From Macrostomum lignano (taxonomy: Eukaryota): a DNA stretch of 64,000 nucleotides. Positions 6,441-59,312 of the stretch are shown here, in pieces; the stretch's first letter is position 1, and the number at the start of each line of letters is the position of its first letter. Made by a program: the position numbers and the translations under genes. The DNA is taken from positions 173,573-237,572 of the forward strand of contig NIVC01001789.1 in the NCBI GenBank assembly GCA_002269645.1. The letters run 5' to 3'. The notes beneath the pieces were generated by a model. It saw only the letters and a list, made by a program, of their open reading frames with translations, was not told the DNA's origin and searched no databases.

Positions 6441-9400
6441 CCACAAACGCAACAACAAAAACAACAACCACAGCAGCAGCATCAGGAGGACGAGCAGCAG
6501 CAGCTAAAACAGTTTCTAAATCTAACTACCGATAGTCAGCATGTTGTTTCAGTTGAGATCAATCGAATCCTTCGAGTACTTGACGCTTTACAACGCCGAG
6601 GCCTTCAGCACCACGTTGCATTGTCCGCCGCAGAAATACTCAGCCTACGCGACTCAATTCGTCGAATGAATCCGTCAGCGTTGAGCTGCGCGGACATCGA
6701 ACTGCTGTCTAACGCTCGAGAGCTTGTCGCTTGCGTTGGTGGAAAGCTGGCCGAGCAGCTGCGCCAGCGACAGCAGCAGCAGCCGCAGCAAAAACAGAAG
6801 CAGCACCAGCACCAGCAGCAGGCTTCCGTCAGGTTAGTCTTCAGTTGAGTTTTAAAACTTTTAGCTATAGCTTCATCAAACAGGAGGTTGTAGCCCAGTG
6901 GCTAGAGCGTCGGACTCACCAATTGAAGGTCGGGGGTTCGACTCCCGATCTCACTGGAACAATTTGTGTCCTTGAGCAAGACACTTAACTCTGCATTGCT
7001 TCAGTTCACCCAGCTGTAAAATGGGTGCCAGCATTAGCTGGGGTGATTGACTGTGCGTGTGGCGACCCCCGTCCTTGGACTGAACAGCCGTACGCAGCCT
7101 TCAGATGCGCCGCGCAATAGCTGCGGCTGAGCTGTCGGTTTCACACCTGCCCCAATTGAGGGCAGGTGTAATCAATTAGTTTTATTCATTATTCATCAGA
7201 AAAGTCCGAGCGGATGTCAGAGAAAGGCAGTTGAAAATATTCATGCTCCACTATGGTTGCGATGCTCGCGCCACAAACATCCAGGTCTCTCGATCGTCTG
7301 CCCCAGATGGAGGCACGGCAGCAGCAGCAAGCGGTCGAACCTGCTTCAGCCAATACACCAGCTCAAGGCCAACTATCAAGCCAAATCGAATCAGTCATTG
7401 AGGGGCTACGCCAGCTCAACACAACAACGGATCATCCAAGTGATCGACCGTTCAAAAACGGAGAAGTTCAAGGCCTGATCCGCGATCTGAGAACAGTCAC
7501 GGCGGACAATGCAACCGAGGTTGACCGGCTGCTCATTCAGCAGCTGGGCGAGAAAATCCGCAGCGTCCGAGAGCAGTCGGCAGAGAATCGAGTAGCCGAC
7601 ACGGCCGAGTCTGGTCCCGACAAGCACCGGGTTCAGAATTTGAAAATTGCTGACGAGTTGCAGTTGTGGGAGCAGACACCTGCTGGACAGCAGCAGTCGC
7701 TTACGGAGCAGCCTGAGGCGGCAACTCCGGCCAAGTCGGAGTCGGCGGCGACAAACGCGCACTCGTCTCAGGTGTCGCCGACCAACGACAAGTCGGCAAA
7801 GGCGGTGCGTTTGAAGAATACTGATGAGGCGGTACAGCAGCAGGAGCAGCGGCGGCCCCAGGCACTGCGCTCGTGCCTCAAGCCGGTCAGCTGGAAGCCC
7901 GCAACCGAGTCGCAAACAGTAAAAAACGACAACGAATCGCGTCCTAGCAGAGGCCGTGAGTTTTGGTCGGGAATGCGGCATCTTTTTCATTTTGTTTTTG
8001 CCTCTCTATATTGCAGACTGTGCATGCCTGACCATGGTAGACAGATTTTATGGTGGGGAGACAAAGCCAACAATTCAACATGTACATGCCAAAATTCCTA
8101 CATTTCCATTATTTTGAGAATCGTGTTGTCAGCGCTCGCTTTGACGCTACAGGCACTCATTTTAGCGCCACAGGCACTCATTTTGGTGCCGCAGGCACTC
8201 ATTTTAGCGCCACAGGCACTCATTTTAGCGCCACAGGCACTCATTTTAGCGCCACAGGCACTCATTTTAGCGCCACAGGCACTCATTTTAGCGCCGCAGG
8301 CACTCATTTTAGCGCTGCAGGCACTCATTTTGGTGCCGCAGGCACTCATTTTAGCGCTGCAGGCACTCATTTTGGTGCCGCAGGCACTCATTTTGGTGCC
8401 GCAGGCACTCATTTTGGTGCCGCAGGCACTCATTTTTAGCGCCGCAGGCATTAATTTTGGCGCCGAAGGCGCTATATTTCGGCGACCTGAAGAAAAATTA
8501 TTAATTACCACAACGGTTCACAAGGTTGTGAACCGTTTTTTACTGTTTGCGCATTGGCATGTCCCCCCATAGCTTTTACCGAAGGGGACATGTCCCCCCA
8601 TAGCTTTTACCGAAGGGGACATGTCCCCCCATAGCTTTTACCGAAGGGGACATGTCCCCCCATAGCTTTTACCGAAGTGGACATGTCCCCCCATAGCTTT
8701 TACCGAAGGGGACATGTCCCCCCATAGCTTTTACCGAAGTGGACATGTCCCCCCATAGCTTTTACCGAAGGGGACATGTCCCCCCATAGCTTTTACCGAA
8801 GGGGACATGTCCCCCATAGCTTTTACCGAAGGGGACATGTCCCCCCATAGCTTTTACCGAAGGGGACATGTCCCCCCATAGCTTTTACCGAAGGGGACAT
8901 GTCCCCCCATAGCTTTTACCGAAGGGGACATGTCCCCCATGGCTTTTACCGAAGTGGACATGTCCCCCCATAGCTTTTACCGAAGGGGACATGTCCCCCT
9001 GACCCCCCGCGATGGCGACGCGCCGATGGTAAAGTCAGACGCAGTTAACCCAAACAAACAACATCTGCCCTAGCTAGAGATAAAAGCAGGAAAAAGATTA
9101 GCGAACTACCAACAAAAATACTGCCGATATGACTAAAACAGACTGGGTGCAAAATGGAACAACGGGTGTTGGGAAGATGCGCCTCAAATACGGGAGACGA
9201 AGTCAATGCAGATAAAGAGAGCTATATAGGAAAGCATTGGATGAGGCTTATCGCATGCTACACTTATCAAGTAATACTTGTTTGCATATACTCTCCAAGG
9301 CTCAGCCCTGCCACTTTGTATGTAGCATCGCATTCAGTTCCTCTCAGACAGGCCTCGCCACTTTTCCTACGGGACAGCAACTGCTGACTGCGAATATTTT

Positions 9401-37524: not shown

Positions 37525-39220
37525 CTGCACCTGAGCATCTGAGAGCAGGATGTCTGCAATCCCACCTGAGTATCTGAGTGCAGGATGTCTGCAATCCCAC
37601 CTGAGTATCTGAGTGCAGGATGTCTGCAATCCCACCTGAGTATCAGAGTGCAGGATGTCTGCAATCCCACCTGAGTCTCCGAGAGCAGGATGTCTGCAAT
37701 CACACCTGAGTCTCCGAGAGCAGGAGAGCAGGATGTCTGCAATCACACCTGAGTCTCCGAGAGCAGGATGTCTGCAATCACACCTGAGTATCTGAGTGCG
37801 AGATATCTGCAATCACACCTGAGTATCTGAGTGCGAGATGTCTGCAATCACACCTGAGTCTCCAAGAGCAGGATGTCTGCAATCACACCTGAGTCTCCAA
37901 GAGCAGGATGTCTGCAATCACACCTGAGTATCAGAGTGCAGGATGTCTGCAATCACACCTGAGTATCTGAGTGCAGGATGTCTGCAATCACACCTGAGCA
38001 TCTTAGTGCAGGATGTCTGCAATCACACCTGAGTATCTGAGTGCGAGATGTCTGCAATCACACCTGAGTCTCCAAGAGCAGGATGTCTGCAATCACACCT
38101 GAGTCTCCAAGAGCAGGATGTCTGCAATCACACCTGAGTATCAGAGTGCAGGATGTCTGCAATCACACCTGAGTATCTGAGTGCGAGATGTCTGCAATCA
38201 CACCTGAGTATCAGAGTGCAGGATGTCTGCAATCACACCTGAGCATCTGAGTGCGAGATGTCTGCAATCACACCTGAGCATCTTAGTGCAGGATGTCTGC
38301 AATCACACCTGAGCATCTTAGTGCAGGATGTCTGCAATCAATCACACCTGAGTATCAGAGTGCAGGATGTCTGCAACCACACCTGAGTATCAGAGTGCAG
38401 GATGTCTGCAATCAATCACACCTGAGTATCTGAGTGCAGGATGTCTGCAATCACACCTGAGCATCTTAGTGCAGGATGTCTGCAATAACACCTAAGCATC
38501 TGAGTGCAGGATGTCTGCAATCACACCTGAGCATCTGAGTGCAGGATGTCTGCAATAACACCTAAGCATCTGAGTGCAGGATGTCTGCAATCACACCTGA
38601 GCATCTGAGTGCAGGATGTCTGCAATCACACCTGAGTATCTGAGTGCAGGATGTCTGCAATCACACCTGAGCATCTGAGTGCGAGATGTCTGCAATCACA
38701 CCTGAGTATCAGAGTGCAGGATGTCTGCAATCACACCTGAGTATCAGAGTGCAGGATGTCTGCAATCACACCTGAGCATCTGAGTGCAGGATGTCTGCAA
38801 TCACACCTGAGTATCAGAGTGCAGGATGTCTGCAATCACACCTGAGCATCTGAGTGCAGGATGTCTGCAATCAATCACACCTGAGTATCAGAGTGCAGGA
38901 TGTCTGCAACCACACCTGAGTATCAGAGTGCAGGATGTCTGCAATCACACCTGAACATCTGAGTGCAGGATGTCTGCAATCACACCTGAGTATCAGAGTG
39001 CAGGATGTCTGCAATCAATCACACCTGAGTATCTGAGTGCAGGATGTCTGCAATCAATCACACCTGAGTATCAGAGTGCAGGATGTCTGCAACCACACCT
39101 GAGTATCAGAGTGCAGGATGTCTGCAATCAATCACACCTGAGTATCTGAGTGCAGGATGTCTGCAATCACACCTGAGCATCTTAGTGCAGGATGTCTGCA
39201 ATAACACCTAAGCATCTGAG
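37525..39220. repeat. 35-bp satellite (GAGTGCAGGATGTCTGCAATCACACCTGAGCATCT)n, left part
   Basis: Period 35. The array resumes at 43023 after the LINE insertion. Confidence 0.96.
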
Positions 39221-42200
39221 CAGATCAACACCCAGCACTGCGTGGCGGCGTCGGTCAACCTGATGCGCACGGCAGAGCAACAGCTTCCGGGCCTGGTCTT
39301 CGTACAGGAGCCCTGGATGACTAAAGGTAAGCCAAATAATGTGCCATCTGGCTACCACTGTTTTTGCATGGCGGGCTCTCAGCCTCGCCCAAGATCTCTG
39401 GTCTTTGCTGCAAAAGCTTTTGAGGCATGGATGAGACCTGATCTCTCGACTGGGGACATCTGTGTTGTTCAAATCAATAACCTCATTCCCAATAAACCTG
39501 TGCTGGTATTGATAGCTTCTGCCTATTTCCCGGGCGATGCCCCAGTTGTCTGCGACGCGTTAGTCAACCTTACTGACTATGCTGCGTCCCATCGGTTCGA
39601 GCTGCTCATTTCAGGGGATGTGAACGCACACCACCTGCATTGGGGCAGCAAGAACATCAATAGCAGAGGCGAGGAGCTGCTGGCCTATGTCAGCAGCACT
39701 AACCTCAACTTCTGTAACGTGGGCAATGCACCAACGTTCAATAATGGGCGGTGGGCCGAAGTCATCGACACCACCATCGCCTCACCCGGACTGCTTTCCG
39801 CAGTTACGGGCTGGCGAGTGTGGGACGAGGACTCGCTCTCGGACCACCGCTTTATCCGCTTTTGCATTGGGCCGACCAAGCAAAAGCCTAAGGTCACTTG
39901 GAGTCGGAACGTCAGGAACACCGATTGGGCCGCCTTTGGCTCGAAGCTGAGCCGCGGCCTTCGGGATCTTGACCCCCCCAGTGACCTCTCTGACTGCCAG
40001 GTGGTGGACGATCTCGCCTCCTCCCTGGGCGGGGCGATCACCACTGCCTTTGAAGCAGCCTGCCCCCTAAAGGCCTATAAAGGCAAGAAATCTGCTCCCT
40101 GGTGGAACCCAGAGCTCGGGGCCCTTCGACGCCGAGCCAGGACCCTCCAAAGGCGAGCGCTCAAAACCAAAGACCCATCTGACAGAGAGGCCTATACCCG
40201 TGCGATCCACGAGTTTAAGGGCCAAGTCAGAAGGGCCAAGACGGCCAAGTGGCGCCAATATTGCGAAGGGCTTGAGGGCTCTCGCCCCGTAGCCCGCGTG
40301 GTTAAGGCACTCACTAATGACCGTTTTTCTAAACTCTCTGTCGTGAAGAGACCTGACGGCTCGGTCACAGAGAGTTCGGAAGAGACTCTAGAGTTCATGC
40401 TCAGCAGTTTTTTCCCTAAATCTCCGACTCAGCAGGGCCCGCCCGACCACACAGTGGGAGGGCAAGGCCTAGCAAAGTCTATGATCACCAAAGACCGCAT
40501 TATTAGAGCGGCAAGGTCCTTTAACCCGTTCAAGGCGCCTGGGCCCGACGGCATCTACCCAGCGTTCTTGCACGAGGCGGTGAAAAACCACCGCTTCCTG
40601 GACCTGCTCTGTCGTCTCCTTCGAGCTTGTGTGGAGCTGGGCTATGTACCAGTTGCATGGAGAGAGGCCCGGGTGGTCTTTATCCCCAAGCCTGGAAAGA
40701 GCGACTACCAATCGGTGAAGGCCTTCAGGCCTATCAGCCTCACTTCTTTCTGCCTCAAGCTCCTCGAGAGACTGGTGCTTTGGCGCCTACTTTCGGTCGA
40801 TCTGAAGCGCTTCCCACTCTCGCAGAACCAGCACGCCTTCCGCGCGGGCAGGTCAACCGAGAGTGCTCTCCATGTCATTGTTGACTTCCTGGAGAGGGCC
40901 GTTCTTGGCAGCGGCTTTGCCCTCTCGCTTTTCCTGGACATTGAGGGGGCCTTCGACAACGTCATCTTCGAGGCCTTTTGCAGAGCCCTGGAATCCAGGG
41001 CCACGCACCCTCACCTTGTCCGGTGGATCATGTTCATGATCCGAAACCGCACTGTTGTGGCCCATCTGAGTGGCAGCTCTCTTTCGGTGCCTGTCCTGAA
41101 AGGGGGCCCCCAGGGCGGCGTTCTCACCCCCGTTCTCTGGAACATGGTCATGGATGAGTTGCTTTGCAGTGATCTCCACGACCCCATTCTCAAGGTGGGC
41201 TATGCCGATGATGTGACCGCGATATGCGCGGGCCCCTCGGTTGATACCATCAGAGACCTTCTGCAGGGCTTTCTGGGACGAGCGGAGCGTTGGGCAGACC
41301 AATGTGGCCTTAGACTCTCAGAGTCGAAAACCACAGCAGTCATGTTTACCAACAAACTGCTCTGGACCATTAAGCCCCTCACCCTCTATGGAAAGAATAT
41401 TTCCATGGAGAAGCAGGTCCGCTGCCTGGGCCTCACTCTGGACCACAGGCTTAACTGGACTCCGCACATTCAAACTAAAGCCAAAAAAGCCCTGGCTGTA
41501 CTGGCTCAGATCAGGCGCGCCGTGGGCACCACCTGGGGGCTCACCCCCAGGAAGCTCTGGTGGATTTACACTGCCATCATCCGCCCCTCGATCAGTTACG
41601 CCAGCCTCGTGTGGGCTAGCGGCCTGAGCGTCAAGAGCAACCTCGACGCTCTCTACAAAATCCAGGGCAGAGCCTGCCGCATGACTATGGGCGCTCCACC
41701 CTCTACTCCTTTTGAAGGCATGAATGCCTTCCTCTGTGCCCCTCCTTTGGATATTTATATCAAAGGAGAGGCGGCGAAGAGCACCCGGCGTCTTCTGGAT
41801 GCTGGGGTGGCCTTCAAGAAAGTGCGGGCCTTTAAGAAGCGGTCGCTTATCCCGCACTCTGACCTCTGCCTCAAGGCTCTCGAGGAGTGTGGCGGGCTCA
41901 ACATCCTCACGGACTCGATCCCAGCCACCCTTCTCCTGAGCCAAAGGTATAAGGTCACCATTCAGCCTCGACACGAGGCGAGTGACAGCTGGAGCGACTC
42001 TGAAGTCCACTGTTACACTGACGGCTCTATGAGGCATGGTCTTTCAGGCTTCGGAGCTTGCGTCTTCTTCAAGGGAGAAGTGGTGTGGAGCTACTCCCAG
42101 CACACTGGGCTCAACTCCAGTGTTTTTCAGAGCGAGGTGCTTGCCATCAGCTCCTGCGCGGCAGAGCTGCGCCGAAGGCAGCTTAGCGGCCGGAAATTTA

Positions 42201-43022
42201 TTTTTCACTCTGACAGCCAAGCAGCCCTTCGGGCCCTCTGCCGCAGCACCGCCAGCTCCAGGTCCGTCCTGGACTGCAACACCCAGCTCAACGGGCTTGC
42301 GCTAGGCAACCAGGTGGAGCTCAGATGGATCCCGGGCCACGCCGGCTTCCCGGCAACGAGCGCGCTGACCTGCTGGCCAAGGCTGGCTCCGCCGGCGCGC
42401 TATTGGGGCCGGGCCCGGGTGCCCCCATCCCCGCCTCGGTGATCAATTCCCGCGTTAAGCGCTGGGCTGACTCCGAGCATCTCCGCAGGTGGCACGACAC
42501 CCGGAATTGTAGGCAATCCCGTGCTGCCGTCCCCTGCCCCTCTCCTCTCCTGCGTAGAGCCCTCCTCAGGCTCAACCGCAGAGACCTCAGAGCAGTTAGC
42601 ATGGCCCTCTCCGGGTATGGCTGCTTCTCTCGCCACCGCTTCCTTCAGGGCCAAGTACCCGAGGAGCGGTGCCCCTTCTGCCGCTCAGGCAGTGAAAACG
42701 CCGAGCATTTTATCTGCCACTGCCAGGTTTTCACCAGGGCCAGGCTTACTCACCTCGGGCCAAACCCGGTTCTCTCCGACGTTTGCAGGCCCGAGAGCAT
42801 CCCGCTGCTCGCCCGGTACCTCAGGGACACCGGACGAGCTGATTTCTTCCCCACCGTCGGTGAGGAGGACCGCGCTGCAGGCGAGACCGACGGGTCCCCC
42901 TGAGCGACACCACTTCAACGGAAGTCGTTGGTCGCCAGGGGCTAGCGGAATGGGCGGTCTCCTCCGCCTCCTCGCTGCATCCGCCGGACGCCCCCTGCAG
43001 CTAAGTCAAAGTAAGTCAAGTC
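39221..43022 (+). mobile_element. 5'-truncated non-LTR retrotransposon, I-group (Loa/R1/Tad1-like): APE endonuclease, RT, RNase H, CCHC
   Basis: The frame opens QINTQHC...VQEPW...GDVNAHH...SDH (APE). RT: KAPGPDG, FRPISL, QHAFR, FLDIEGAFD, PQGGVL, YADD. RNase H: YTDGS, SEVLAI, SDSQAAL, WIPGHAG then GNERADLLAK after a 1-bp frameshift at about 42350. C-terminal CPFC...H...C, stop at 42903, (AAGTC)n tail, TSD AAGCATCTGAG at 39210-39220 and 43023-43033. Confidence 0.95.
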
Positions 43023-43225
43023 AAGCATCTGAGTGCAGGATGTCTGCAATCACACCTGAGCATCAGAGTGCAGGATGTCTGCAATCACACCTGAGCATCT
43101 GAGTGCAGGATGTCTGCAATCAATCACACCTGAGTATGAGTGCAGAATGTCTGCAATCACACCTTAGTATGAGTGCAGGATGTCTGCAATCACACCTGAG
43201 TATCCGAGAGCAGGATGTCTGTCAC
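43023..43225. repeat. 35-bp satellite, right part
   Basis: Same unit as 37525-39220. Confidence 0.95.
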
Positions 43226-44470: not shown

Positions 44471-45214
44471 CAGTCTTCATGCCAGAAATTCTTCCCATTA
44501 ACGTGAGAAATTCGCTTCCTATCTGCTACATAAGCATATTTTGTACTGCGTGATCAATCCACCGATATGTAGCGTAACTAACTTTTTGGATATTTTCTTT
44601 AATTTTCAATTTCTTCAATTTCAAGCAAGCTAAAAATGGCATGACTTGGCTTTTCACATTTTTCGGTAGAAGAAGAAGAAGACGAAGAAAGCAGAAGTAT
44701 TTTCAATTTCTGCTTATCCGAGAGACAGCCAACGCGGAAACACTTCCCTGTCTTGGTCTTGTGCGGGAAATTGCGAGCCGTAGAGGGTAGACCCGGTAGG
44801 TCCCCTCTAAGCGGATATTGAGTCCGCAACAGGAAGTCCTATTTGTTTCCTTTTGGCTGATTCCCATCTTCAGCAGTTAAATTGTCACCAGCCGGATATA
44901 TTGATATATTAGGTCACGTGACTTCTATAAAAATAGTGAATCAAATCAACAGCTAGAAATTCAGGCATCTTGATTCGGAAATTGCCTTGAGAAGCAACTT
45001 TGTTGGAGTTTTATATTTAACGGCACTGATAGGGGCGCCTTTTCGGACTCAAAATCTAATTATCGATAGGTCCGGCATTGGATTTTACATTTCACTTAAT
45101 CAGGAACTGAGTGAGCGAGTTGCAGATGAGGCAGGTCAGAGGGAAATTAGAGATTAATTGAAGAGAAAGAAGGGGCGAAGTGGGTTACGGGAAAGGGGAC
45201 ACGCTGGATCAGAG

Positions 45215-48200
45215 AGAGAGGGAGATAGATCGGGGAGAGAGGGAGATAGATCGTGGAGTGAGGGAGATAGATCGGGGAGAGAGGGAGATAGATCGGGGAG
45301 AGAGGGAGATAGATCGGGGAGAGAGGGAGATAGATCGTGGAGTGAGGGAGATAGATCGGGGAGAGAGGGAGATAGATCGGGGAGAGAGGGAGATAGATCG
45401 GGGAGAGAGGGAGATAGATCGGGGAGAGGGAGATAGATCGTGGAGTGAGGGAGATAGATCGGGGAGAGAGAGAGATAGATCGGGGAGAGAGGGAGATAGA
45501 TCGTGGAGTGAGGGAGATAGATCGTGGAGTGAGGGAGATAGATCGGGGAGAGAGGGAGATAGACCGGGGAGAGAGGGAGATAGATCGTGGAGTGAGGGAG
45601 ATAGATCGGGGAGAGAGGGAGATAGATCGGGGAGAGAGGGAGATAGATCGTGGAGTGAGGGAGATAGATCGGGGAGAGAGGGAGATAGATCGGGGAGAGA
45701 GGGAGATAGATCGGGGAGAGAGGGAGATAGATCGTGGAGTGAGGGAGATAGATCGTGGAGTGAGGGAGATAGATCGGGGAGAGAGGGAGATAGATCAGAG
45801 AGAGAGGGAGATAGATCGGGGAGAGAGGGAGATAGATCGTAGAGTGAGGGAGATAGATCGGGGAGAGAGGGAGATAGATCGGGGAGAGAGGGAGATAGAT
45901 CGGGGAGAGAGGGAGATAGATCGGGGAGAGAGGGAGATAGATCAGGGAAAGAGGGAGATAGATCAGGGAAAGAGGGAGATAGATCGTGGAGTGAGGGAGA
46001 TAGATCGGGGAGAGAGGGAGATAGATCGTGGAGTGAGGGAGATAGATCGGGGAGAGAGGGAGATAGATCGGGGAGAGAGGGAGATAGATCGGGGAGAGAG
46101 GGAGATAGATCGTGGAGTGAGGGAGATAGATCGTGGAGTGAGGGAGATAGATCGGGGAGAGAGGGAGATAGATCGGGGAGAGAGGGAGATAGATCGGGGA
46201 GAGAGGGAGATAGATCAGGGAAAGAGGGAGATAGATCGTGGAGTGAGGGAGATAGATCGGGGAGAGAGGGAGATAGATCGTGGAGTGAGGGAGATAGATC
46301 GGGGAGAGAGGGAGATAGATCAGGGAAAGAGGGAGATAGATCGTGGAGTGAGGGAGATAGATCGGGGAGAGAGGGAGATAGATCAGGGAAAGAGGGAGAT
46401 AGATCGTGGAGTGAGGGAGATAGATCGGGGAGAGAGGGAGATAGATCGGGGAGAGAGGGAGATAGATCAGGGAAAGAGGGAGATAGATCGTGGAGTGAGG
46501 GAGATAGATCGGGGAGAGAGGGAGATAGATCGGGGAGTGAGGGAGATAGATCGGGGAGAGAGGGAGATAGATCAGGGAAAGAGGGAGATAGATCGTGGAG
46601 TGAGGGAGATAGATCGTGGAGTGAGGGAGATAGATCGGGGAGAGAGGGAGATAGATCGGGGAGAGAGGGAGATAGATCGTGGAGTGAGGGAGATAGATCG
46701 GGAGAGAGAGGAGATAGATCGTGGAGTGAGGGAGATAGATCGGGGAGAGAGGGAGATAGATCAGGGAAAGAGGGAGATAGATCGTGGAGTGAGGGAGATA
46801 GATCGGGGAGAGAGGGAGATAGATCGTGGAGTGAGGGAGATAGATCGGGGAGAGAGGGAGATAGATCGGGGAAAGAGGGAGATAGATCGTGGAGTGAGGG
46901 AGATAGATCGGGGAGAGAGGGAGATAGATCGTGGAGTGAGGGAGATAGATCGGGGAGAGAGGGAGATAGATCAGGGAAAGAGGGAGATAGATCGTGGAGT
47001 GAGGGAGATAGATCGTGGAGTGAGGGAGATAGATCGGGGAGAGAGGGAGATAGATCAGGGAAAGAGGGAGATAGATCGTGGAGTGAGGGAGATAGATCGG
47101 GGAGAGAGGGAGATAGATCGTGGAGTGAGGGAGATAGATCGTGGAGTGAGGGAGATAGACCGGGGAGAGAGGGAGATAGATCAGGGAAAGAGGGAGATAG
47201 ATCGTGGAGTGAGGGAGATAGATCGGGGAGAGAGGGAGATAGATCGTGGAGTGAGGGAGATAGATCGGGGAGAGAGGGAGATAGATCAGGGAAAGAGGGA
47301 GATAGATCGTGGAGTGAGGGAGATAGATCGGGGAGAGAGGGAGATAGATCGTGGAGTGAGGGAGATAGATCGGGGAGAGAGGGAGATAGATCAGGGAAAG
47401 AGGGAGATAGATCGTGGAGTGAGGGAGATAGATCGGGGAGAGAGAGAGATAGATCGTGGAGTGAGGGAGATAGATCGGGGAGAGAGGGAGATAGATCGTG
47501 GAGTGAGGGAGATAGATCGGGGAGAGAGGGAGATAGATCGTGGAGTGAGGGAGATAGATCGGGGAGTGAGGGAGATAGATCGGGAGAGAGGGAGATAGAT
47601 CAGGGAAAGAGGGAGATAGATCGTGGAGTGAGGGAGATAGATCGGGAGAGAGGGAGATAGATCGTGGAGTGAGGGAGATAGATCGGGGAGAGAGGGAGAT
47701 AGATCAGGGAAAGAGGGGATAGATCGTGGAGTGAGGGAGATAGATCGGGGAGAGAGGGAGATAGATCGTGGAGTGAGGGAGATAGATCGGGGAGAGAGGG
47801 AGATAGATCAGGGAAAGAGGGAGATAGATCGTGGAGTGAGGGAGATAGATCGGGGAGAGAGGGAGATAGATCAGGGAAAGAGGGAGATAGATCGTGGAGT
47901 GAGGGAGATAGATCGTGGAGTGAGGGAGATAGATCGGGGAGAGAGGGAGATAGATCAGAGAGAGAGGGAGATAGATCGGGGAGAGAGGGAGATAGATCGT
48001 AGGGTGAGGGAGATAGATCGGGGAGAGAGGGAGATAGATCGGGGAGAGAGGGAGATAGATCGGGGAGAGAGGGAGATAGATCGGGGAGAGAGGGAGATAG
48101 ATCAGGGAAAGAGGGAGATAGATCAGGGAAAGAGGGAGATAGATCGTGGAGTGAGGGAGATAGATCGGGGAGAGAGGGAGATTGATCAGGGAAAGAGGGA

Positions 48201-50258
48201 GATAGATCGTGGAGTGAGGGAGATAGATCGGGGAGAGAGGGAGATAGATCAGGGAAAGAGGGAGATAGATCGGGGAGAGAGAGAGATAGATCGTGGAGTG
48301 AGGGAGATAGATCGGGGAGAGAGGGAGATAGATCGTGGAGTGAGGGAGATAGATCGGGGAGAGAGGGAGATAGATCGTGGAGTGAGGGAGATAGATCGTG
48401 GAGTGAGGGAGATAGATCGGGGAGAGAGGGAGATAGATCAGGGAAAGAGGGAGATAGATCGTGGAGTGAGGGAGATAGATCGGGGAGAGAGGGAGATAGA
48501 TCGGGGAGAGAGGGAGATAGATCGTGGAGTGAGGGAGATAGATCGGGGAGAGATAGATCGGAGATAGATCAGGGAAAGAGGGAGATAGATCGTGGAGTGA
48601 GGGAGATAGATCGGGGAGAGAGGGAGATAGATCGTGGAGTGAGGGAGATAGATCGGGGAGAGAGGGAGATAGATCAGGGAAAGAGGGAGATAGATCGTGG
48701 AGTGAGGGAGATAGATCGGGGAGAGAGGGAGATAGATCAGGGAAAGAGGGAGATAGATCGTGGAGTGAGGGAGATAGATCGGGGAGAGAGGGAGATAGAT
48801 CGTGGAGTGAGGGAGATAGATCGGGGAGAGAGGGAGATAGATCAGGGAAAGAGGGAGATAGATCGTGGAGTGAGGGAGATAGATCGGGGAGAGAGGGAGA
48901 TAGATCAGGGAAAGAGGGAGATAGATCGTGGAGTGAGGGAGATAGATCGGGGAGAGAGAGAGATAGATCGTGGAGTGAGGGAGATAGATCGGGGAGAGAG
49001 GGAGATAGATCGTGGAGTGAGGGAGATAGATCGGGGAGAGAGGGAGATAGATCGTGGAGTGAGGGAGATAGATCGGGGAGTGAGGGAGATAGATCGGGGA
49101 GAGAGGGAGATAGATCAGGGAAAGAGGGAGATAGATCGTGGAGTGAGGGAGATAGATCGGGGAGAGAGGGAGATAGATCGTGGAGTGAGGGAGATAGATC
49201 GGGGAGAGAGGGAGATAGATCAGGGAAAGAGGGGGATAGATCGTGGAGTGAGGGAGATAGATCGGGGAGAGAGGGAGATAGATCGTGGAGTGAGGGAGAT
49301 AGATCGGGGAGAGAGGGAGATAGATCAGGGAGAGAGAGAGATAGATCGTGGAGTGAGGGAGATAGATCGGGGAGAGAGGGAGATAGATCGTGGAGTGAGG
49401 GAGATAGATCGGGGAGAGAGGGAGATAGATCGTGGAGTGAGGGAGATAGATCGGGGAGTGAGGGAGATAGATCGGGGAGAGAGGGAGATAGATCAGGGAA
49501 AGAGGGAGATAGATCGTGGAGAGAGGGAGATAGATCGGGGAGAGAGGGAGATAGATCGGGGAGAGAGGGAGATAGATCAGGGAAAGAGGGAGATAGATCA
49601 GGGAAAGAGGGAGATAGATCGTGGAGTGAGGGAGATAGATCGGGGAGAGAGGGAGATTGATCAGGGAAAGAGGGAGATAGATCGTGGAGTGAGGGAGATA
49701 GATCGGGGAGAGAGGGAGATAGATCAGGGAAAGAGGGAGATAGATCGTGGAGTGAGGGAGATAGATCGGGGAGAGAGAGAGAGATAGATCGTGGAGTGAG
49801 GGAGATAGATCGGGGAGAGAGGGAGATAGATCGTGGAGTGAGGGAGATAGATCGGGGAGAGAGGGAGATAGATCGTGGAGTGAGGGAGATAGATCGTGGA
49901 GTGAGGGAGATAGATCGGGGAGAGAGGGAGATAGATCAGGGAAAGAGGGAGATAGATCGTGGAGTGAGGGAGATAGATCGGGGAGAGAGGGAGATAGATC
50001 GTGGAGTGAGGGAGATAGATCGGGGAGAGAGGGAGATAGATCAGGGAAAGAGGGAGATAGATCGTGGAGTGAGGGAGATAGATCGGGGAGAGAGGGAGAT
50101 AGATCGGGGAGTGAGGGAGATAGATCAGGGAGAGAGGGAGATAGATCAGGGAAAGAGGGAGATAGATCGGGGAGTGAGGGAGATAGATCGGGGAGAGAGG
50201 GAGATAGATCAGGGAAAGAGGGAGATAGATCGGGGAGAGAGGGAGATAGATCGGGGGG
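45215..50258. repeat. 21-bp minisatellite GGGAGATAGATC+(GGGGAGAGA/GTGGAGTGA/AGGGAAAGA), about 5 kb
   Basis: About 240 units with three interspersed variants. The EREIDRG ORFs are repeat translations. Confidence 0.97.
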
Positions 50259-51074: not shown

Positions 51075-51295
51075 GTCTACGCCAATCTGGGGTGTAAGCT
51101 AGAGCGCCAATCTGGGGGTAGCTAGGGCGCCAATCTGGGGATAGCTAGGGCGCCAATCTGGGGATAGCTAGGGCGCCAATCTGGGGATAGCTAGGGCGCC
51201 AATCTGGGGATAGCTAGGGCGCCAATCTGGGATAGCTAGGGCACCAATCTGGGGATAGCGCCAATCTGGGGATAGCTAGGTTCGCCAATCTGAGG
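51075..51295. repeat. 23-bp minisatellite (GCTAGGGCGCCAATCTGGGGATA)n
   Basis: Period 23 (51121, 51144, 51167). Confidence 0.92.
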
Positions 51296-52133
51296 GTGCT
51301 CACAGTGACACCAGGAAGCTGAGCTTGGCAAAAAAGTGACATAAGTTGGACTTGGTATAGAAGAGAATAAGCAAGTGAATAATTAGGAACTCTACTTTAT
51401 ATGAGCTTAAGTTGACATAATATTCCCAATTATCCTCTTTGGTGTTCTCCGTTATCGCAAGTCCAACTTTTGTCACTTTTTCGCCAAGCCCAGCTTTCTG
51501 GTGTCCCTGACACCCTGTGAGCAGAATGACGTATCATTTGTGTACATACATAGGTTACTCGGGCTCCACTTTTTGAGCTTAAATTGACAGCCCCTTTTTT
51601 GTTAATGATCTCATCAAAAGAAATTGATGTCTCTCTTGTCCAGAAGCGCAGTCGAATAAAAATCAACTTTACTTTTGTTTTAAACGCCGACTAATATACT
51701 CGTACATGGGATATGGAATGATCAAAACAAAATACTAATAATCAACAATTGACTAATAGTGCTCAATGCAATACTTGATGCACAAAAATGAAGGCTAGCT
51801 TTATTTTTTAACTACATTTCAGCAATGGTACTAGCCACTAATAGCTACGTGGGTGGGCTGCCACTTGCAGACGGAGGCTTCTTTACATTCTAATTAACTT
51901 CTCATTCTCTAGAGTCTAGAATCCTTATGTTTCTTCGCCTTTCGAGAGTAGTTTGAACGGGGACGGGAGAGGAAGAGAGGAAGACAAAATCGATCGATTC
52001 GAGGGCGGAGAGAGGCTCTGAAGCCCAAGTTGAGAGAATTAATCGCGCAATGTACAGAGCGCGAGAGCATTAGAAGCGCGTAGGCGCGTAGACATGTACA
52101 ACCTGAAGTCTATCTAGTTCGTTCCAGTAGTGA

Positions 52134-52140
52134 GTGTGCA
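52134..52140 (-). promoter_or_regulatory. Candidate metal-response element TGCACAC upstream of the metallothionein
   Basis: Matches the MRE core TGCRCNC about 410 bp before the ATG. An E-box TCACGTGA lies at about 52240 and a TATA-like TTTAAATAAA at about 52472. A single 7-mer can occur by chance. Confidence 0.35.
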
Positions 52141-52546
52141 ATTGTACATATGAACTCCCATGGTTAGAGACAACGAGAAAGCGACAAGCCTATAGTTATT
52201 GGTCAGCTAATGGCCCGTGGACTGGCCCGTGGAACTAAATCACGTGACCTCTATTCCCGCCGTAGCCGCCTGCCACCCGTCCCCCCTAATTCACACCCCC
52301 AATTCTTTACTCGCTCCAATGTACACTTGAGGGCAGAGGAGTGGGGTTTATTTTTAGCACTCCGCGAGATGCTAATTCTTTCAAGGAAGGTCCCTCCTCA
52401 ACTTCTTATCTTTAAAACAGCCCTTCTGTAACCTCTATTTATCATTGTTAGCTAGAGCTCCGACGGATCGATTTAAATAAATTTAAAATTTGATCCAATC
52501 CAGACAATCTTCTCGCTCACTCGCTGACTCCCTACCGAAGTTGAAG

Positions 52547-52795
52547 ATGGACTGCAAATCGTGTAGCCAAAATTGCAAATGCGGCCCCAATTGCACACCC
52601 GGTGGCGATTGCTGCAAAAAGAACGGCTGCGGATGCTCGGCGAAGTCGGAAGCCGCTACCAGCGTCGGCGGCTGCTGCGGTGGAGCCAAGAACGCTGCTG
52701 CTACTGCTGCGTCGGATAAGGCTTGCAAATGCGGCACAGGCTGCACACCCGGTGGCGAGTGTTGCAAAAGGAACAACTGTCATTGCTCGGAGTGA
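52547..52795 (+). CDS. Metallothionein, 82 aa, 18 Cys, intronless
   Basis: MDCKSCSQNCKCGPNCTPGGDCCKKNGCGCS-linker(GGCCGG)-ACKCGTGCTPGGECCKRNNCHCSE, with CxC, CC and CxxC motifs and no aromatic residues. AATAAA at 52963-52968. Confidence 0.88.
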   Translation: MDCKSCSQNCKCGPNCTPGGDCCKKNGCGCSAKSEAATSVGGCCGGAKNAAATAASDKACKCGTGCTPGGECCKRNNCHCSE

Positions 52796-53116
52796 CAATT
52801 CTTGGCAGACTGTTGTTATAACTAGTGACTTAGTGTCGTACATTGAAATTGAATACTAATTAAATTAATCGTTACTGTCTGTCTTATCTATGTATGCCGC
52901 TGTTTGTTGTGAATATTCATCATATCGCAACGCTTTAAGCCGCCATCAATTCAATGTAATACAATAAATAATATTTTGTTGAGCATTATCCTACTCGTTT
53001 ATGAATATACTTTGTTGTCCTCTACGACATAAAATTATCGACAATATTATAAGTTTCATTGGCTGTTTGTCAAGATCTGCTTTCACAAGCTCGAATATTT
53101 CATTCAACCTTTAAAA

Positions 53117-53910
53117 CAGGGGTCGGCAAAGTTTTTTACCTCAATGGTTAGGTAGAGAACCTAGGGCATGACTGCGCTGGAGGGGAGAGGAGAGGGAATA
53201 GAGAAGAGATAAAAGAGATAGGAGAAAGGAGAGGCGAGAGAATAAAGAAGAGAGGCGTCGCCACCGTGGGGGACCTGCTATATAGTAAGCTATGGGAGGG
53301 ACATGCCAATGCTTTGTCATCCACCCGACCTTGTGACCCGTTGTGGAAATCAATAGTTTTGCTTCAGGGCGACAAAACACAGTGCCTGAGGCGCTAAAAT
53401 GAGTACCAGCGGCGCTAAAATGAGTGCCTGCAGCGCTAAAATGAGTGCCTGCGGCGCTAAAATGAGTGCCTGCAGCGCTAAAATGAGTACCATCAGCGCT
53501 AAAATGAGTGCCAGCAGCGCTAAAATGAGTGCCTGGAGCGCTAAAATGAGTGCATGCGGCGCTAAAATGAGTGCATGCGGCGCTAAAATGAGTGCATGCG
53601 GCACCAAAATGAGCGCTGGCAATACTAATTCTGAAAACAATGTACATGTACGTGTAGAATTCTGCCCTTTGTTCCCCCCACCCACCATAAAATCCATATC
53701 ATGCCGACACCCCTGAAGATAGGAGATATAGAATAGGAGAGAAGAGTGGATAGAAGAGAAGAGAGAAAAGAGAGGAGATTAGAGATAAGAGGGATGAGAA
53801 GAGACACAAGCCTTGAGTGGGCCGGATTGCCAATGTAAAGTTTCAAAGACCCGTGCGCCGGATACGAGCGTAGAGAGGCTTTGCCGTCCGGTCGAGTTTG
53901 CCGATCCCTG
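53117..53910. mobile_element. hAT/Charlie-type MITE with nested insertion
   Basis: TIRs CAGGGGTCGGCAAA / TTTGCCGATCCCTG and a perfect 8-bp TSD CTTTAAAA (53109-53116, 53911-53918). The TIR resembles the MER58/Charlie type. Confidence 0.9.
53251..53714. mobile_element. Nested MITE-like element with a 21-bp array (GCGCTAAAATGAGTGCCTGCA)n
   Basis: Imperfect TIR AGAGGCGTCGCCA / TGCCGACACCCCT, flanked by GAAG on both sides. Absent from the sister hAT copy at 56792. Homologous to 8020-9025. Confidence 0.7.
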
Positions 53911-53919
53911 CTTTAAAAC

Positions 53920-55410
53920 TTCACAAGATTCCTCTTTAGGTTGACGACGTGAAACTATTTCGAGTTAATGAATCCGCCTGAGACTGCTGCTGGTCTGGTT
54001 TGTTGGATCCGCCTGCTGCGCCTTGGCCATTCCCATGAAATCAACGCCAGGGAGCAACTGGGGCTGAACAGAAGCCACCGTGCAACGGGAGAGCGCGTCC
54101 GCTGCTGCGTTGTCCTTGCCTGCCACATGTTGGACAATCGTGCTGAATTCGGACACATAGGCCAGGTAGCGCTGCTTTCTTGCGCTGACCAAGGCTGTAC
54201 GGGTCCGCAGCGGCGGCTGCGGTGAGCTACAGGCCCGACCCCGTGCTGTCAATCAGGTGCACGCGAGCATTGAGCAGACGCCGATGCGGCAGGTCCATAG
54301 CAGGCCATGATGCCGGAGAAAACCCGCGCCGATCAACGGTCGCTGAACCGCAGCCAGAATGAATAGGCAAGAGCAACGCCGGATGCCTAGGTCCAGAGTG
54401 AACTGGTGGGCCGGTGCCAAAAGTTCGGATTTGACAACCGTTGGCTGCATTGAGCGGTGGGCCTTGGCGCAGCATTTGGGCTGCTCTGCGATGATCGGAA
54501 AGATGTTGACTTCGGCACCGGTGTCAACACGGAAACGCCGGCCTGTCTGCAGAGATCCGGGACAAGGAGTAGACTGCTGCTGCCGGCCGCCGAGCTGTTC
54601 ACTGACGGCTGGCCTGCCCCGTTTCCCTGAAACCTACATGGGGCTTCGCATCGCCTGGACTTCGCGCCGAACTTCTTGAGAAAAAAGCAAAGACCGCTGG
54701 CTTCACCCCTGTGGTAGCTCACCCCTATCGAAACGGTTGACACGACTCTCACGGGCGGCCGCGACCACAGGCTGGTGAACCACCGCAATCCCTGGCTGGG
54801 GTCGACTAGCCCAGAGCTTGTCGACGAGCAGTGCCACCGATCGGGGCTCCTTGAAATTCGCGGAGACCAACGCCATGCGGATGTCGGCCGGTAGCTGCTG
54901 CTGACGGAACAATACTTCAAAAAGCATGCTGGGTGAGTTGTCGCCCAGCAGCGCCAGCATTTCGTTCATTAGCTCAGACGGACGAGGATCGGCCGGTTAT
55001 GTTGAGCAATCGATTGGCCCGTTGTTGCCTCGATAAACCGAAAGTGCCAAGCAGGCAAGCCTTCAACTGCCATGCGTACTTGTTTTCAGTAGGGGGGTCC
55101 TCAAGAACATCCAAGAAACGTTATGCGAACTGGTGGTCTAGCGCTGCGACCAGCTGATAGTAGTATTTGGTCGAGTCCTGCGTGGCGCCCCTACGTGTAA
55201 ACTGAGCCTCGGCTTGGATAAACCATGCTCGGGGCTGGGAGGCCTAAAATGGAGGCAGCTTGAGCGCTACTGCGCTGACAGTTGTGTTGCTGCTCGCATC
55301 GTTAAAAACGCTGGCTGTTGTGCTGATGCCAGTAGCGATGACAGGTTCGTGCTCTGTGACATCGGCAGCTGCATCAACTGTGTTAGCGCTGTTGCTGTGT
55401 GCTCTGGCAT
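53920..55410 (-). mobile_element. Degenerate, internally deleted Gypsy LTR retrotransposon (CsRn1/Kabuki-like)
   Basis: gag: KLPPF*..P.AWFIQAEAQF...STKYYY, LMNEMLALLG, and the knuckle CFFLKKFGAKSRRCEAPC. Protease: RVDTGAEVNIFP, LIGAGFLRHHGLL. It then jumps to the RNase H end (RQQRYLAYVSEF...HVAGKDNAAADALSR). RT is absent and there are many stops and frameshifts. Confidence 0.88.
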
Positions 55411-57146: not shown

Positions 57147-59312
57147 CTACTTGATAGAAGCTCCGGAACCCGACTTTACAGCTTTCTGCTCTTCCGATTT
57201 CTGATGCAGACAATAGCAAAGCGCTCTCAGATGAGGCAACTTATCACCTAGACAGGCGGCTTGTTGACGATAGGCGTTCACCCGACTAACACTATTTATA
57301 TCCATGCTCAGTCGGTGACTAGCAATGTCCTCTTGCACCGTCACCTCGTAGTGGCCATGATTAGGCAGCGTCTCAATTGTGAGCCGATATAGTCGATAGC
57401 CGGCCGACATCGTGTCCGAGAAGTCCGGATTTCTACCGTCCGCGTCTGCGCTTGCCTGTAACAAATAGTGTCGGGTGTTGATTTTTGCCTGCAGTCGAGA
57501 GTAGAGCATCACTTCCTGCCCTAAATTGATTCTATCTCTTCCCTCTGCTATACGCGTAATACGATCCTGATTTCTTCCTTAAAAATTTCACCTACCTTGA
57601 AGGAGAGAATCTTAGTCGATGGTGCGTATCCATCCACGGCAAGCAGCTTGGAGAAGGTCAACTCGGCGCATTGATCTCGATGCTTCTCAGTTTGCGCATT
57701 GAACTGCGCTACAACGTAATAACCAATCGTTTTGACGTTAGTGCCCAACGGACTGAGCGACTGCCAGGCAAGGCAAGCGCACCAATGCGCTTCGATGCCT
57801 ATTTGAGCGCAATTGCGCTTCTCTGAAATTGGCGTAAAAAGGCTGACGCCGGCCTCGCGTTTACTAGTGGTCTTTGTGTTCTCCTGATGCTGCGGCGGCG
57901 GCTGGGGCGTAAAAAATTCGGCAGCATGCCGCATCGTTGCGTGCAAATCAAGCGGTGTAATCAGGCGATTTTGATTTTTTATTAGCTGTTTGGTCTCTAT
58001 AGGATGAGCGTCTTTCAGACGCTTGGGTAAGGCTATGCCTAGAAAGGGCAGGCGCTCTTCATATTTTCCTTGAAGCGTTGATCGCGTCTTGGCATAACGG
58101 TGGCCATGGTCGGACATAAGTATCAGTATGGAATCATCCAGGTGTTTAGATTCTTTCAGATAGCGCAGATAAGCCAATAGATCGGCGTCCATCGGGCTTA
58201 GGTAATAGTTGTCTTCGTGGCTCAACTCGGAGTGAAACACAAAGGTAAACTTCTTGCGGTTCCGATACACGTCCAGGAAGTCCTTCTGCCAATCGATTTT
58301 CACTTGATGAAGCGGCTTAGAGCCCAGGCAGCCGTACTTCCGGTGCGGATAGAGTTCATCAAGCTTCAGATAGAATGGTCGCATATAGTGATCAGTAGGC
58401 TGCTTCTTAAAGCCCAGCAGTCGTACTGGAAAGTGCCGTATTTAGAACCGTCCTCGCCAAACTGGGTTGTGTAGTTCTTAGCCGCCAGTCGCGCCAGATC
58501 CACGGATAATCGTCGACGGGTTTCGAATTGTTAAAACCGCGACGCGATTCGTACAGTTCGCTCTCCAGATGGCCAGTCAGCATTGGCAGCAGATTTGGCG
58601 TCGTGCCGTCACCTAGGATGTTGAATTTTTCGAACACGACGCCGCCAATGTCGTTAATAAAGTAGCCGTACGACTTTGGCAGATAGCGCTTCCAGGCTTC
58701 TCGCGATACTGAATCCAGGCCGAAAAGAATTATGCTTAACGGCTTTTGGTTCTGTTTGATGTACGGCGCCTCCTTAGATAGCTTTGGCGCTATACCCGCG
58801 TGCAACAGTTGGTACTGCTTCGATCTTTGCTCACTGGCGCAGTTAGCAACAAAGAAGTCGTTGATTAGTTGCCTATTCGTCGATATATCATCGACAGCTT
58901 CACCGTAGTAGACGGAGAAATCGTCGTCACGCAATACGGGCACCATGGCGCACTTGACGTCAGGATATGCGCTGCGTGTAGCGTCCGTAATCCGAAAAGT
59001 GCCGCCCTCGGACGTGACCCAGTTAGGCTCGGCAGCAGTGCAGTTCAGTGTGTACAACGGTCTCGCCGATATTAACTGCTGTTGAAGGGGCGGCAGAATG
59101 CAGAGACTTTCAGTATCCTCCTTGGCCCCAGAGAGCACAACGTCCTGTTTGATTTGCAACGGATGAAAGCGCTTCTTGATGAGATTCGGCTGCCGGAGTA
59201 GCTCCAGAAACACGTACACTATCGGCACGCATATAATTAGCGTCCACATTAGCCGGTAGTGTGATCTTCCAAGCCGAGCGTAGTACATAATGCGACGCAT
59301 TATTCGAACCAT
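57147..59312 (-). CDS. DUF229 family protein (alkaline-phosphatase/sulfatase-like fold) with an N-terminal membrane anchor; two 1-bp frameshifts as assembled
   Basis: Motifs GLDSVSR, FNILGDGTTPNLLPMLTG, SELSHED, MSDHGHRY, EERLPF, RLITPLDLHAT, C.QIGIEAHWCAC, SR.N.Y...C...LCYC. Intron 57456-57595 (AAG|GTAGGT...TACAG). The frame is restored by adding one base at about 58478 and one at about 58423. Confidence 0.85.

What the first reader, a model, noticed from the sequence alone, without database searches (positions are those of the whole stretch)
52547..52795. Metallothionein built from two copies of a 7-Cys module around a CC linker
Residues 10-31 (CKCGPNCTPGGDCCKKNGCGCS) and 60-81 (CKCGTGCTPGGECCKRNNCHCS) are clear internal duplicates with spacing CxC-x3-C-x5-CC-x4-CxC. 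They are separated by a 28-aa Ala/Gly/Ser linker with a central GGCCGG and preceded by CxxC. This layout differs from the vertebrate alpha/beta arrangement, and I do not recognise it from described families, so it may be a new modular MT type. The compact gene has a TATA-like box, a candidate MRE and AATAAA.
Basis: partly seen in the sequence, partly recalled or inferred. Interest (0 to 1): 0.7.

Follow-up and report, generated by a model that had tools for sequence, protein, structure and literature searches.

The report
Candidate flatworm metallothionein, duplicated Cys module
This is a small, intronless, cysteine-rich gene of the free-living flatworm Macrostomum lignano that has every sequence hallmark of a metal-binding metallothionein; it matters modestly because no flatworm metallothionein has been described, but metal binding has not been shown.

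Summary
The ORF is real: 52547-52795 (+), 82 aa, 18 Cys (22%), no aromatic residues, no signal peptide. It contains two 22-aa 7-Cys modules (16/22 aa and 54/68 nt identical, no gaps), a 28-aa Ala/Gly/Ser linker with a central CC, and an N-terminal CxxC. The window is Macrostomum lignano (assembly Mlig_3_7). The genome holds three near-identical copies. One is annotated, from transcript evidence, only as 'hypothetical protein'.

No homologue outside this species turned up in 1.8 billion protein representatives or in metagenome contigs. Pfam is silent, but it is equally silent for genuine snail and lobster metallothioneins, so that says nothing.

The N-terminal 9-Cys block has the same Cys number and span as the mollusc/chelicerate beta1 domain, with 7 of 9 Cys in register. 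The repeated module matches the last 7 Cys of beta1 with one CxC changed to CC (P about 0.01-0.02 under a metallothionein-like null). Profile similarity is just as high to sea-urchin beta and Drosophila MtnA, so family membership is unresolved.

The 'candidate MRE' is at chance level.

Best reading: a lineage-specific, beta-type, two-domain metallothionein, probably binding about six divalent ions (confidence about 0.6). Interest is moderate.

The parts
52547..52795 (+). Complete intronless CDS (82 codons plus TGA) of the candidate metallothionein. A at -3 and G at +4 around the ATG. No upstream ATG in the preceding 87 nt.
   Evidence: Identical protein on a second M. lignano contig and a 98% identical annotated paralogue (PAA92471.1).
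52553..52639 (+). N-terminal 9-Cys block (residues 3-31): Cx2Cx3[CxC]x3Cx5[CC]x4[CxC]. Beta1-like, inferred to form one three-metal thiolate cluster.
   Evidence: 7/9 Cys in register with Helix and Littorina beta1 over the same 28-residue Cys span.
52574..52639 (+). Module 1 (residues 10-31, CKCGPNCTPGGDCCKKNGCGCS), 7 Cys.
52640..52723 (+). 28-aa low-complexity Ala/Gly/Ser/Thr linker (residues 32-59) encoded by GCN/GGN-rich DNA. Lowest predicted order in the protein.
   Evidence: pLDDT below 50 for residues 30-60
52673..52678 (+). CC pair (Cys43-Cys44) inside GGCCGG. Possibly supplies the two extra thiolates that bring module 2 to nine (inference).
   Evidence: Conserved in all three genomic copies.
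52724..52789 (+). Module 2 (residues 60-81, CKCGTGCTPGGECCKRNNCHCS), 7 Cys. Duplicate of module 1.
   Evidence: 54/68 nt and 16/22 aa identical, no gaps
52472..52481 (+). TATA-like TTTAAATAAA, 66-75 nt upstream of the ATG. Conserved in the three copies. Function untested.
52963..52968 (+). AATAAA, 168 nt after the stop codon. Plausible poly(A) signal, untested.
52134..52140 (-). The only MRE-core match (TGCACAC) upstream of the gene. Judged a chance occurrence and not counted as part of the system.
   Evidence: 62 matches in the window, most in satellites; shuffles give 37 per 64 kb on both strands

Best explanation
The ORF encodes a cytosolic metallothionein of Macrostomum lignano.

The apo-protein is probably disordered. 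Its 18 cysteine thiolates would wrap Zn(II)/Cd(II), or Cu(I), into metal-thiolate clusters.

The most likely organisation is two beta-type units. Unit 1 is residues 3-30: the CxxC plus module 1, nine Cys. Unit 2 is module 2, seven Cys, possibly completed to nine by the linker's CC. By analogy with the nine-Cys domains of snail metallothioneins, each of which forms one Cd3 cluster, each unit would hold about three divalent ions, giving about M(II)6 per protein.

The gene arose by an internal 150-nt-offset duplication of the 7-Cys module. This is the usual route by which metallothioneins grow.

Shown here: the ORF, its composition, the duplication, the three genomic copies, transcript-based annotation of a paralogue, and the similarity of the Cys register to beta1.

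Inferred: metal binding, stoichiometry, domain boundaries, and cytosolic location.
For: Composition and motifs: 22% Cys, Gly/Ala/Lys/Ser-rich, no aromatic residues and no Leu/Ile, maximum Kyte-Doolittle (11-residue window) 0.88, so no signal peptide or membrane segment.

Cys register: 7/9 (N-terminal block) and 6/7 (module) coincide with the mollusc beta1 pattern. P = 0.023 and 0.014 under a null that draws Cys spacings from 14 other metallothionein domains. No other domain type in that panel reaches more than 5 of 7 for the module.

Profile comparison: the two modules score 24.1 over all 22 columns against Helix plus Littorina beta1. A column-shuffled null gives 13.3 +/- 3.2, and 0.7% of shuffles reach the observed score. 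Scores are similar against sea-urchin beta (24.9) and Drosophila MtnA (29.7), but only about 10-11 against rat and lobster domains.

Smith-Waterman against beta1: z = 2.9-3.6 versus composition-preserving shuffles.

The gene is real. The ORF is intact in three copies, whose only length difference is an in-frame 3-nt indel, while the flanks carry 64-190 gap columns per 1.2 kb. GenBank models for this assembly derive solely from RNA-seq transcripts (PMC5730564), and one copy is annotated (PAA92471.1).

Snail nine-Cys domains each form one Cd3 cluster, and two-domain forms bind 6 Zn or 6 Cd (PMC5535943).

Internal duplication of Cys modules is the documented mode of metallothionein evolution (PMC7826182, PMC13168519).
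Against: There is no experimental metal binding or induction.

No homologue exists outside M. lignano in the searchable databases, so conservation cannot be assessed.

dN/dS between the two modules is 0.64 on very few sites. The paralogues are too similar for a selection test: 2 substitutions in 249 nt against about 2.2% in the flanks.

MRE-type elements are not enriched.

The beta1 similarity is only P about 0.02 before correcting for the 10-15 domain types one could compare with. Comparable profile scores to unrelated-looking families show that such scores are inflated for Cys-rich peptides.

AlphaFold gives no confident fold (pLDDT 48.7). This is expected for a metallothionein without metal, but it gives no positive support.
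Confidence: 0.6

Rival explanations
1. It is a lineage-specific small Cys-rich protein with a role other than metal handling. Examples would be a structural or redox protein of sperm, eggshell or adhesive organs, comparable to Cys-rich sperm-tail proteins. Its resemblance to metallothioneins would then be convergent composition.
For: No homologue exists outside the species. Similarity scores to several mutually unrelated metallothionein families are about equal, as expected if they reflect shared CxC/CKCG-type low complexity. No MRE enrichment. Many young M. lignano genes are reproduction-related (PMC7336406, abstract seen).
Against: No signal peptide and no repeats of the Cys-Gly-Pro type. 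Total absence of aromatic and aliphatic residues. The full-length ungapped register with beta1 includes the shared K, G and T. Its transcript-cluster identifier was not found in the held supplements of M. lignano expression papers, but those texts do not use that identifier format, so this is uninformative.
Confidence: 0.2
2. It is a young, transcribed ORF without selected function. It would have been born from GC-rich trinucleotide-like DNA and an internal duplication, and is still intact only because the three copies diverged very recently.
For: The linker is encoded by GCN/GGN low-complexity DNA. The paralogues differ too little to show purifying selection. Module dN/dS is 0.64. A synonymous-codon test against the neighbouring DUF229 gene does not single out the reading frame. 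The field itself proposes frequent de novo birth of metallothionein-like sORFs (PMC13168519).
Against: The two modules have diverged 21% at DNA level, yet all 14 Cys remain. The only changes in Cys codons are synonymous, and there is no frameshift. The sole indel among copies is in frame, whereas the flanks are riddled with indels. The start context is good and there is no upstream ATG.
Confidence: 0.15
3. It is a secreted, disulfide-rich peptide (toxin-, defensin- or adhesive-like).
For: High Cys content alone.
Against: The N-terminus MDCKSCSQNCK is hydrophilic (mean hydropathy -0.70 over residues 1-20) and there is no hydrophobic stretch anywhere. No upstream in-frame ATG could add a leader. 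No confident fold was predicted.
Confidence: 0.03

Closest known systems
Beta1 domain of mollusc metallothioneins (Helix pomatia CdMT, PDB 6qk5; Littorina littorea MT, PDB 5ml1). The same Cys pattern is reported as domain D1b of chelicerate and myriapod MT1.
   Same: Nine Cys in a 28-residue span, with 7 in register. The 7-Cys module superimposes on the last 7 Cys of beta1 without gaps. CKCG and C-T are shared at the same positions, giving 11/29 identities.
   Different: First motif is CxxC instead of CxC. The fourth motif is CC-x4 instead of CxC-x3. It ends in S or SE rather than K. The complete block is N-terminal, not C-terminal. There is no alpha/beta2/beta3 partner domain. Instead there is a truncated second copy after a 28-aa linker, whereas mollusc linkers are 2-10 aa.
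Sea-urchin metallothionein beta domain (PDB 1qjl) and Drosophila MtnA
   Same: Profile scores to the module are equal to or higher than those to beta1 (24.9 and 29.7). MtnA also ends in C-x-C-S-E.
   Different: Only 4 of 7 Cys fall in register without gaps. The urchin beta sequence matched PDB 1qjl over its full length, but the alignment was not displayed.
Plant type 1-3 metallothioneins (from general knowledge)
   Same: Overall layout: two short Cys-rich ends separated by a long linker of roughly 30-45 residues.
   Different: Plant linkers are Cys-free and often contain aromatic residues. The Cys patterns differ, and no sequence relationship was detected (pea domains z of 1.5 or less).
Fungal modular metallothioneins built by tandem amplification of a basic Cys unit (Cryptococcus neoformans, Tremella mesenterica)
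   Same: Built by repeating a short Cys module separated by spacers (mentioned in PMC5535943, and PMC12508003). The 7-Cys size of the fungal unit is from memory.
   Different: Different Cys spacing. These are Cu-thioneins with 3-5 or more units. Neurospora-type 7-Cys pattern matches only 4 of 7.

Membership tests
Metallothionein (operational class) | Small size (below about 10 kDa) | tested here: met
   82 aa
Metallothionein (operational class) | High Cys content (about 15-30%) arranged in CxC, CC and CxxC motifs | tested here: met
   18/82 = 22%, with 16 of 18 Cys in such motifs
Metallothionein (operational class) | No or very few aromatic residues and His; no secretion signal | tested here: met
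   0 Phe/Trp/Tyr, 1 His, maximum hydropathy 0.88
Metallothionein (operational class) | Binds several metal ions in thiolate clusters | not testable with these tools
   Needs recombinant protein with ESI-MS/ICP-AES and CD/UV spectroscopy
Metallothionein (operational class) | Metal-responsive expression. This is usual but not obligatory, and MRE/MTF-1 control applies only in some phyla. | tested here: inconclusive
   One MRE core in the upstream kilobase, which is chance level. No expression data could be reached.
Mollusc-type beta1 domain | Exact Cys pattern [CxC]x3-4[CxC]x3Cx5[CxC]x3[CxC] (PMC7826182) | tested here: not met
   Pattern is Cx2Cx3[CxC]x3Cx5[CC]x4[CxC]: 7/9 in register, two Cys displaced by one position
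Mollusc-type beta1 domain | Similarity beyond composition and specific to beta1 | tested here: inconclusive
   hhalign score 24.1, P = 0.007 against column shuffles; register P about 0.02. Urchin beta and MtnA score as high. No database profile could be built because the protein collection returned no mollusc metallothioneins.
Mollusc-type beta1 domain | C-terminal position after an alpha/beta2/beta3/gamma/delta domain with a 2-10-aa linker | tested here: not met
   The complete block is N-terminal, the linker is 28 aa, and the partner is a truncated copy of itself
Pfam PF00131 Metallothio (vertebrate type) and other Pfam metallothionein families | Match to the profile | tested here: not met
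   0 families at E up to 10. Controls: rat MT2 hits at 6.6e-20, but genuine Helix and lobster metallothioneins also give 0 hits, so the test has no power for invertebrate types.

The most novel reading that the evidence does not exclude
This is the first metallothionein of the phylum Platyhelminthes, and its modules descend from the ancient bilaterian beta1 domain. A basal free-living flatworm would then have kept, and internally duplicated, the ancestral metal-binding domain. The reported absence of metallothionein genes in schistosomes and other parasitic flatworms would be a secondary loss, or a failure of detection, rather than a primitive state.
Probability: 0.3. Interest if true: 0.55.

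Novelty: new variant of a known kind. Interest (0 to 1): 0.4.

Why it matters
Metallothioneins are well characterised mainly in chordates and molluscs, and other phyla are patchy (PMC13168519). Parasitic flatworms are stated not to have metallothionein genes and to rely on phytochelatin synthase (PMC3561135).

A confirmed metallothionein in Macrostomum, a transgenic and RNAi-tractable model, would fill a phylum-level gap. It would provide an easily tested case for the proposal that a beta2/beta1-type protein predates bilaterian diversification. It would also give ecotoxicology a molecular marker in a marine flatworm.

It would not overturn anything. New lineage-specific metallothioneins built by module duplication are found regularly.

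Tried and rejected
1. Pfam scan gave no hit. It was shown to be uninformative by controls.

2. phmmer against PDB returned only complex I and CO-dehydrogenase noise.

3. Word-indexed search of 5.8 billion proteins found only the paralogue P0001. Full HMMER over 1.84 billion representatives found P0001 plus P0002, a translated repeat and not a relative.

4. Two remaining protein searches used snail and oyster metallothionein queries to collect beta1 domains. They returned nothing, so the collection evidently lacks them. No database-derived beta1 profile could be built.

5. A metagenome scan with module patterns gave one hit. It is a bacterial OmpA-like protein with a chance ENCKCGPNC.

6. Selection tests were underpowered, both on the paralogues and on module dN/dS. 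A synonymous-codon test did not discriminate the frame.

7. The transcript cluster name Mlig008448 was looked up in the supplements of four M. lignano expression papers. It was absent or the supplements were not held, and the identifier format was not present.

8. AlphaFold2 on the single sequence gave pLDDT 48.7. No fold search was done because it would be meaningless.

9. The minus-strand ORFs overlapping the locus (97 and 103 aa, Ala-rich) were rejected as antisense artefacts of GCN-rich coding DNA. The annotated paralogue is on the plus strand.

10. The bacterial-type promoter and terminator scan is irrelevant to a eukaryote.

Full report
**Observation**

- The start codon has A at -3 and G at +4. 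There is no ATG in the 87 nt before it.
- Residues 10-31 and 60-81 are duplicates. They share 16/22 residues, and offset 50 is the only offset with more than 4 identities.
- At DNA level, 54/68 nt are identical without gaps, blastn E = 3.8e-11.
- All seven Cys of the module are kept, and two Cys codons differ only synonymously.
- The 28-aa linker, its central GGCCGG and the N-terminal CxxC are as described.
- Elsewhere in the window, comparable Cys density occurs only in translations of simple satellites. This ORF lies in unique sequence between two short arrays (51080-51292 and 53381-53613).

**Origin and copies**

The window is 100% identical to the end of contig NIVC01001789.1 of the Macrostomum lignano assembly Mlig_3_7, GCA_002269645.1.

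The genome has three copies:
- the window copy;
- an identical CDS on NIVC01001146.1;
- a copy on NIVC01000051.1 with one synonymous change, one Ser-to-Leu change and an in-frame 3-nt insertion.

The third copy is the only one annotated (PAA92471.1 / A0A267H2E1, 'hypothetical protein BOX15_Mlig008448g3').

GenBank gene models of this assembly come exclusively from RNA-seq-based transcripts with TransDecoder ORFs (PMC5730564). The locus family is therefore transcribed. I could not see the reads themselves.

The flanks of the copies differ by about 2.2% and carry many indels. The CDS differs by 0.8% and has only an in-frame indel. That is in the expected direction for a coding gene but is statistically weak. 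The assembly is known to be redundant because of recent chromosome duplication, which explains the three copies.

**What it is**

Sequence-level criteria of a metallothionein are all met:
- small size;
- 22% Cys, almost all in CxC/CC/CxxC motifs;
- rich in Gly, Ala, Lys and Ser;
- no aromatic or aliphatic residues;
- one His;
- no hydrophobic segment, hence no signal peptide.

AlphaFold2 gives no confident fold (pLDDT 48.7, lowest in the linker). This is what a metal-dependent fold would give, but it is not positive evidence.

**Homology searches**

Pfam finds nothing. Controls show this is meaningless: rat MT2 hits PF00131 at 6.6e-20, but the structurally solved Helix pomatia Cd-metallothionein and lobster MT-1 also return zero families.

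HMMER against 1.84 billion representatives and the word-indexed search of 5.8 billion proteins return only the paralogue. A metagenome scan returned one chance bacterial hit.

The protein is therefore an orphan at the sequence level in what can be searched here. Short Cys-rich ORFs are commonly unannotated, and the collection does not even return mollusc metallothioneins.

**Comparison with known families**

The mollusc beta1 domain is defined as [CxC]x3-4[CxC]x3Cx5[CxC]x3[CxC] (PMC7826182, Table 1). Residues 3-30 of the flatworm protein read Cx2Cx3[CxC]x3Cx5[CC]x4[CxC].

- Both have nine Cys in the same 28-residue span. Seven are in register and two are displaced by one position.
- The duplicated 7-Cys module equals the last seven Cys of beta1 with one CxC collapsed to CC.
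- Against the PDB-verified beta1 sequences of Helix (6qk5) and Littorina (5ml1), the ungapped alignment gives 11/29 identities. These include K, G and T at the positions typical of molluscs.

Statistics:
- Smith-Waterman z = 2.9-3.6 against composition-preserving shuffles.
- Under a null that draws Cys spacings from 14 other metallothionein domains, the register match has P = 0.023 for the 9-Cys block and P = 0.014 for the 7-Cys module.
- hhalign of the two modules against Helix plus Littorina beta1 aligns all 22 columns, score 24.1. Column-shuffled templates give 13.3 +/- 3.2, and 0.7% reach the observed score.

Specificity is not established:
- It scores 19 against the snail beta3 control.
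- It scores only about 10-11 against rat and lobster domains.

I conclude that the module is genuinely metallothionein-like beyond composition and that its Cys register is closest to beta1. Membership of the mollusc family fails the strict pattern and position tests, and homology is unresolved.

The field uses Cys-motif patterns as the homology criterion. It has recently proposed that the beta2/beta1 arrangement predates bilaterian diversification (PMC13168519). A slightly slipped beta1 in a flatworm fits that idea but does not prove it. The same authors also argue that metallothionein domains arise de novo frequently.

**Mechanism (inferred)**

In snail metallothioneins, each nine-Cys domain folds around one Cd3 cluster, and two-domain forms bind six Zn or Cd (PMC5535943).

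By analogy, the N-terminal nine-Cys block should bind three divalent ions. Module 2 has seven Cys. With the linker's CC it has nine, and could then form a second cluster, giving about M(II)6. Without the CC it would bind fewer. The linker is low-complexity, is encoded by GCN/GGN-rich DNA, and is predicted to be disordered.

Metal preference cannot be read from the sequence with any confidence.

**Regulatory claims**

The TATA-like element (52472-52481) and AATAAA (52963-52968) exist, and the proximal 450 nt are nearly identical in the three copies.

The MRE core occurs once upstream, at about -410 on the minus strand, which is chance expectation. The two matches inside the gene are Cys-Thr-Pro codons. 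MTF-1/MRE control is therefore not supported. It is also not excluded, and it is not a requirement for a metallothionein.

**Literature**

- No paper in the searchable corpus links metallothionein to Macrostomum or describes a flatworm metallothionein sequence.
- Schistosomes and other parasitic flatworms are stated not to have such genes (PMC3561135).
- One review reports metallothionein up-regulation in planarians after metal exposure, without sequence information in the passage read.

**Verdict**

I rate it a new variant of a known kind, with moderate interest (0.4). Confidence that it is a functional metal-binding metallothionein is about 0.6.

The main rivals are a non-metal role for a lineage-specific Cys-rich protein (0.2) and a young ORF without selected function (0.15).

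Noticed in passing
window 51347-53995 versus L002 and L003: The three genomic copies are mosaics. In the 1.2 kb upstream, the window and L002 differ by 1 mismatch, while L003 is 2.1% away. In the 1.2 kb downstream, L002 and L003 are identical, while the window is 2.2% away. This points to recombination or gene conversion, or an assembly chimera, just 3' of the CDS.
   Followed up: partly
window 52240-52247: Palindromic E-box TCACGTGA about 300 nt upstream of the ATG, conserved in all three copies. It could be a bHLH-Zip (USF/TFE-type) site. Not tested against chance.
   Followed up: no
window 52347-52357: Pyrimidine tract plus AG (TTTATTTTTAG) about 190 nt upstream of the ATG. It is a possible spliced-leader trans-splice or 5'-UTR intron acceptor. 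About 39% of M. lignano genes are trans-spliced.
   Followed up: no
window 39242-42442 (+): 1066-aa ORF of a non-LTR (LINE-type) retrotransposon with endonuclease, RVT_1 and RNase H domains. It is flanked by a 35-bp satellite (37528-39220 and 43024-43221) that carries most of the window's MRE-core matches.
   Followed up: partly
window 57548-59312 (-): Two adjacent ORFs, both matching Pfam DUF229 (profile positions 42-211 and 246-494). This is one gene split by a short intron or a frameshift, and it is the nearest conventional gene to the metallothionein candidate.
   Followed up: partly
window 53381-53613 and 8150-8470: The same 21-bp satellite unit occurs in opposite orientations at the two sites: AGTGCCTGCGGCGCTAAAATG versus its reverse complement. 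More generally, roughly 40 tandem arrays fill much of the window, including a 5-kb array of a 21-bp unit at 45207-50256.
   Followed up: no
L004 991-1032: A bacterial OmpA-like ORF from a metagenome contig contains ENCKCGPNCLC by chance. It is not related to the flatworm gene.
   Followed up: yes
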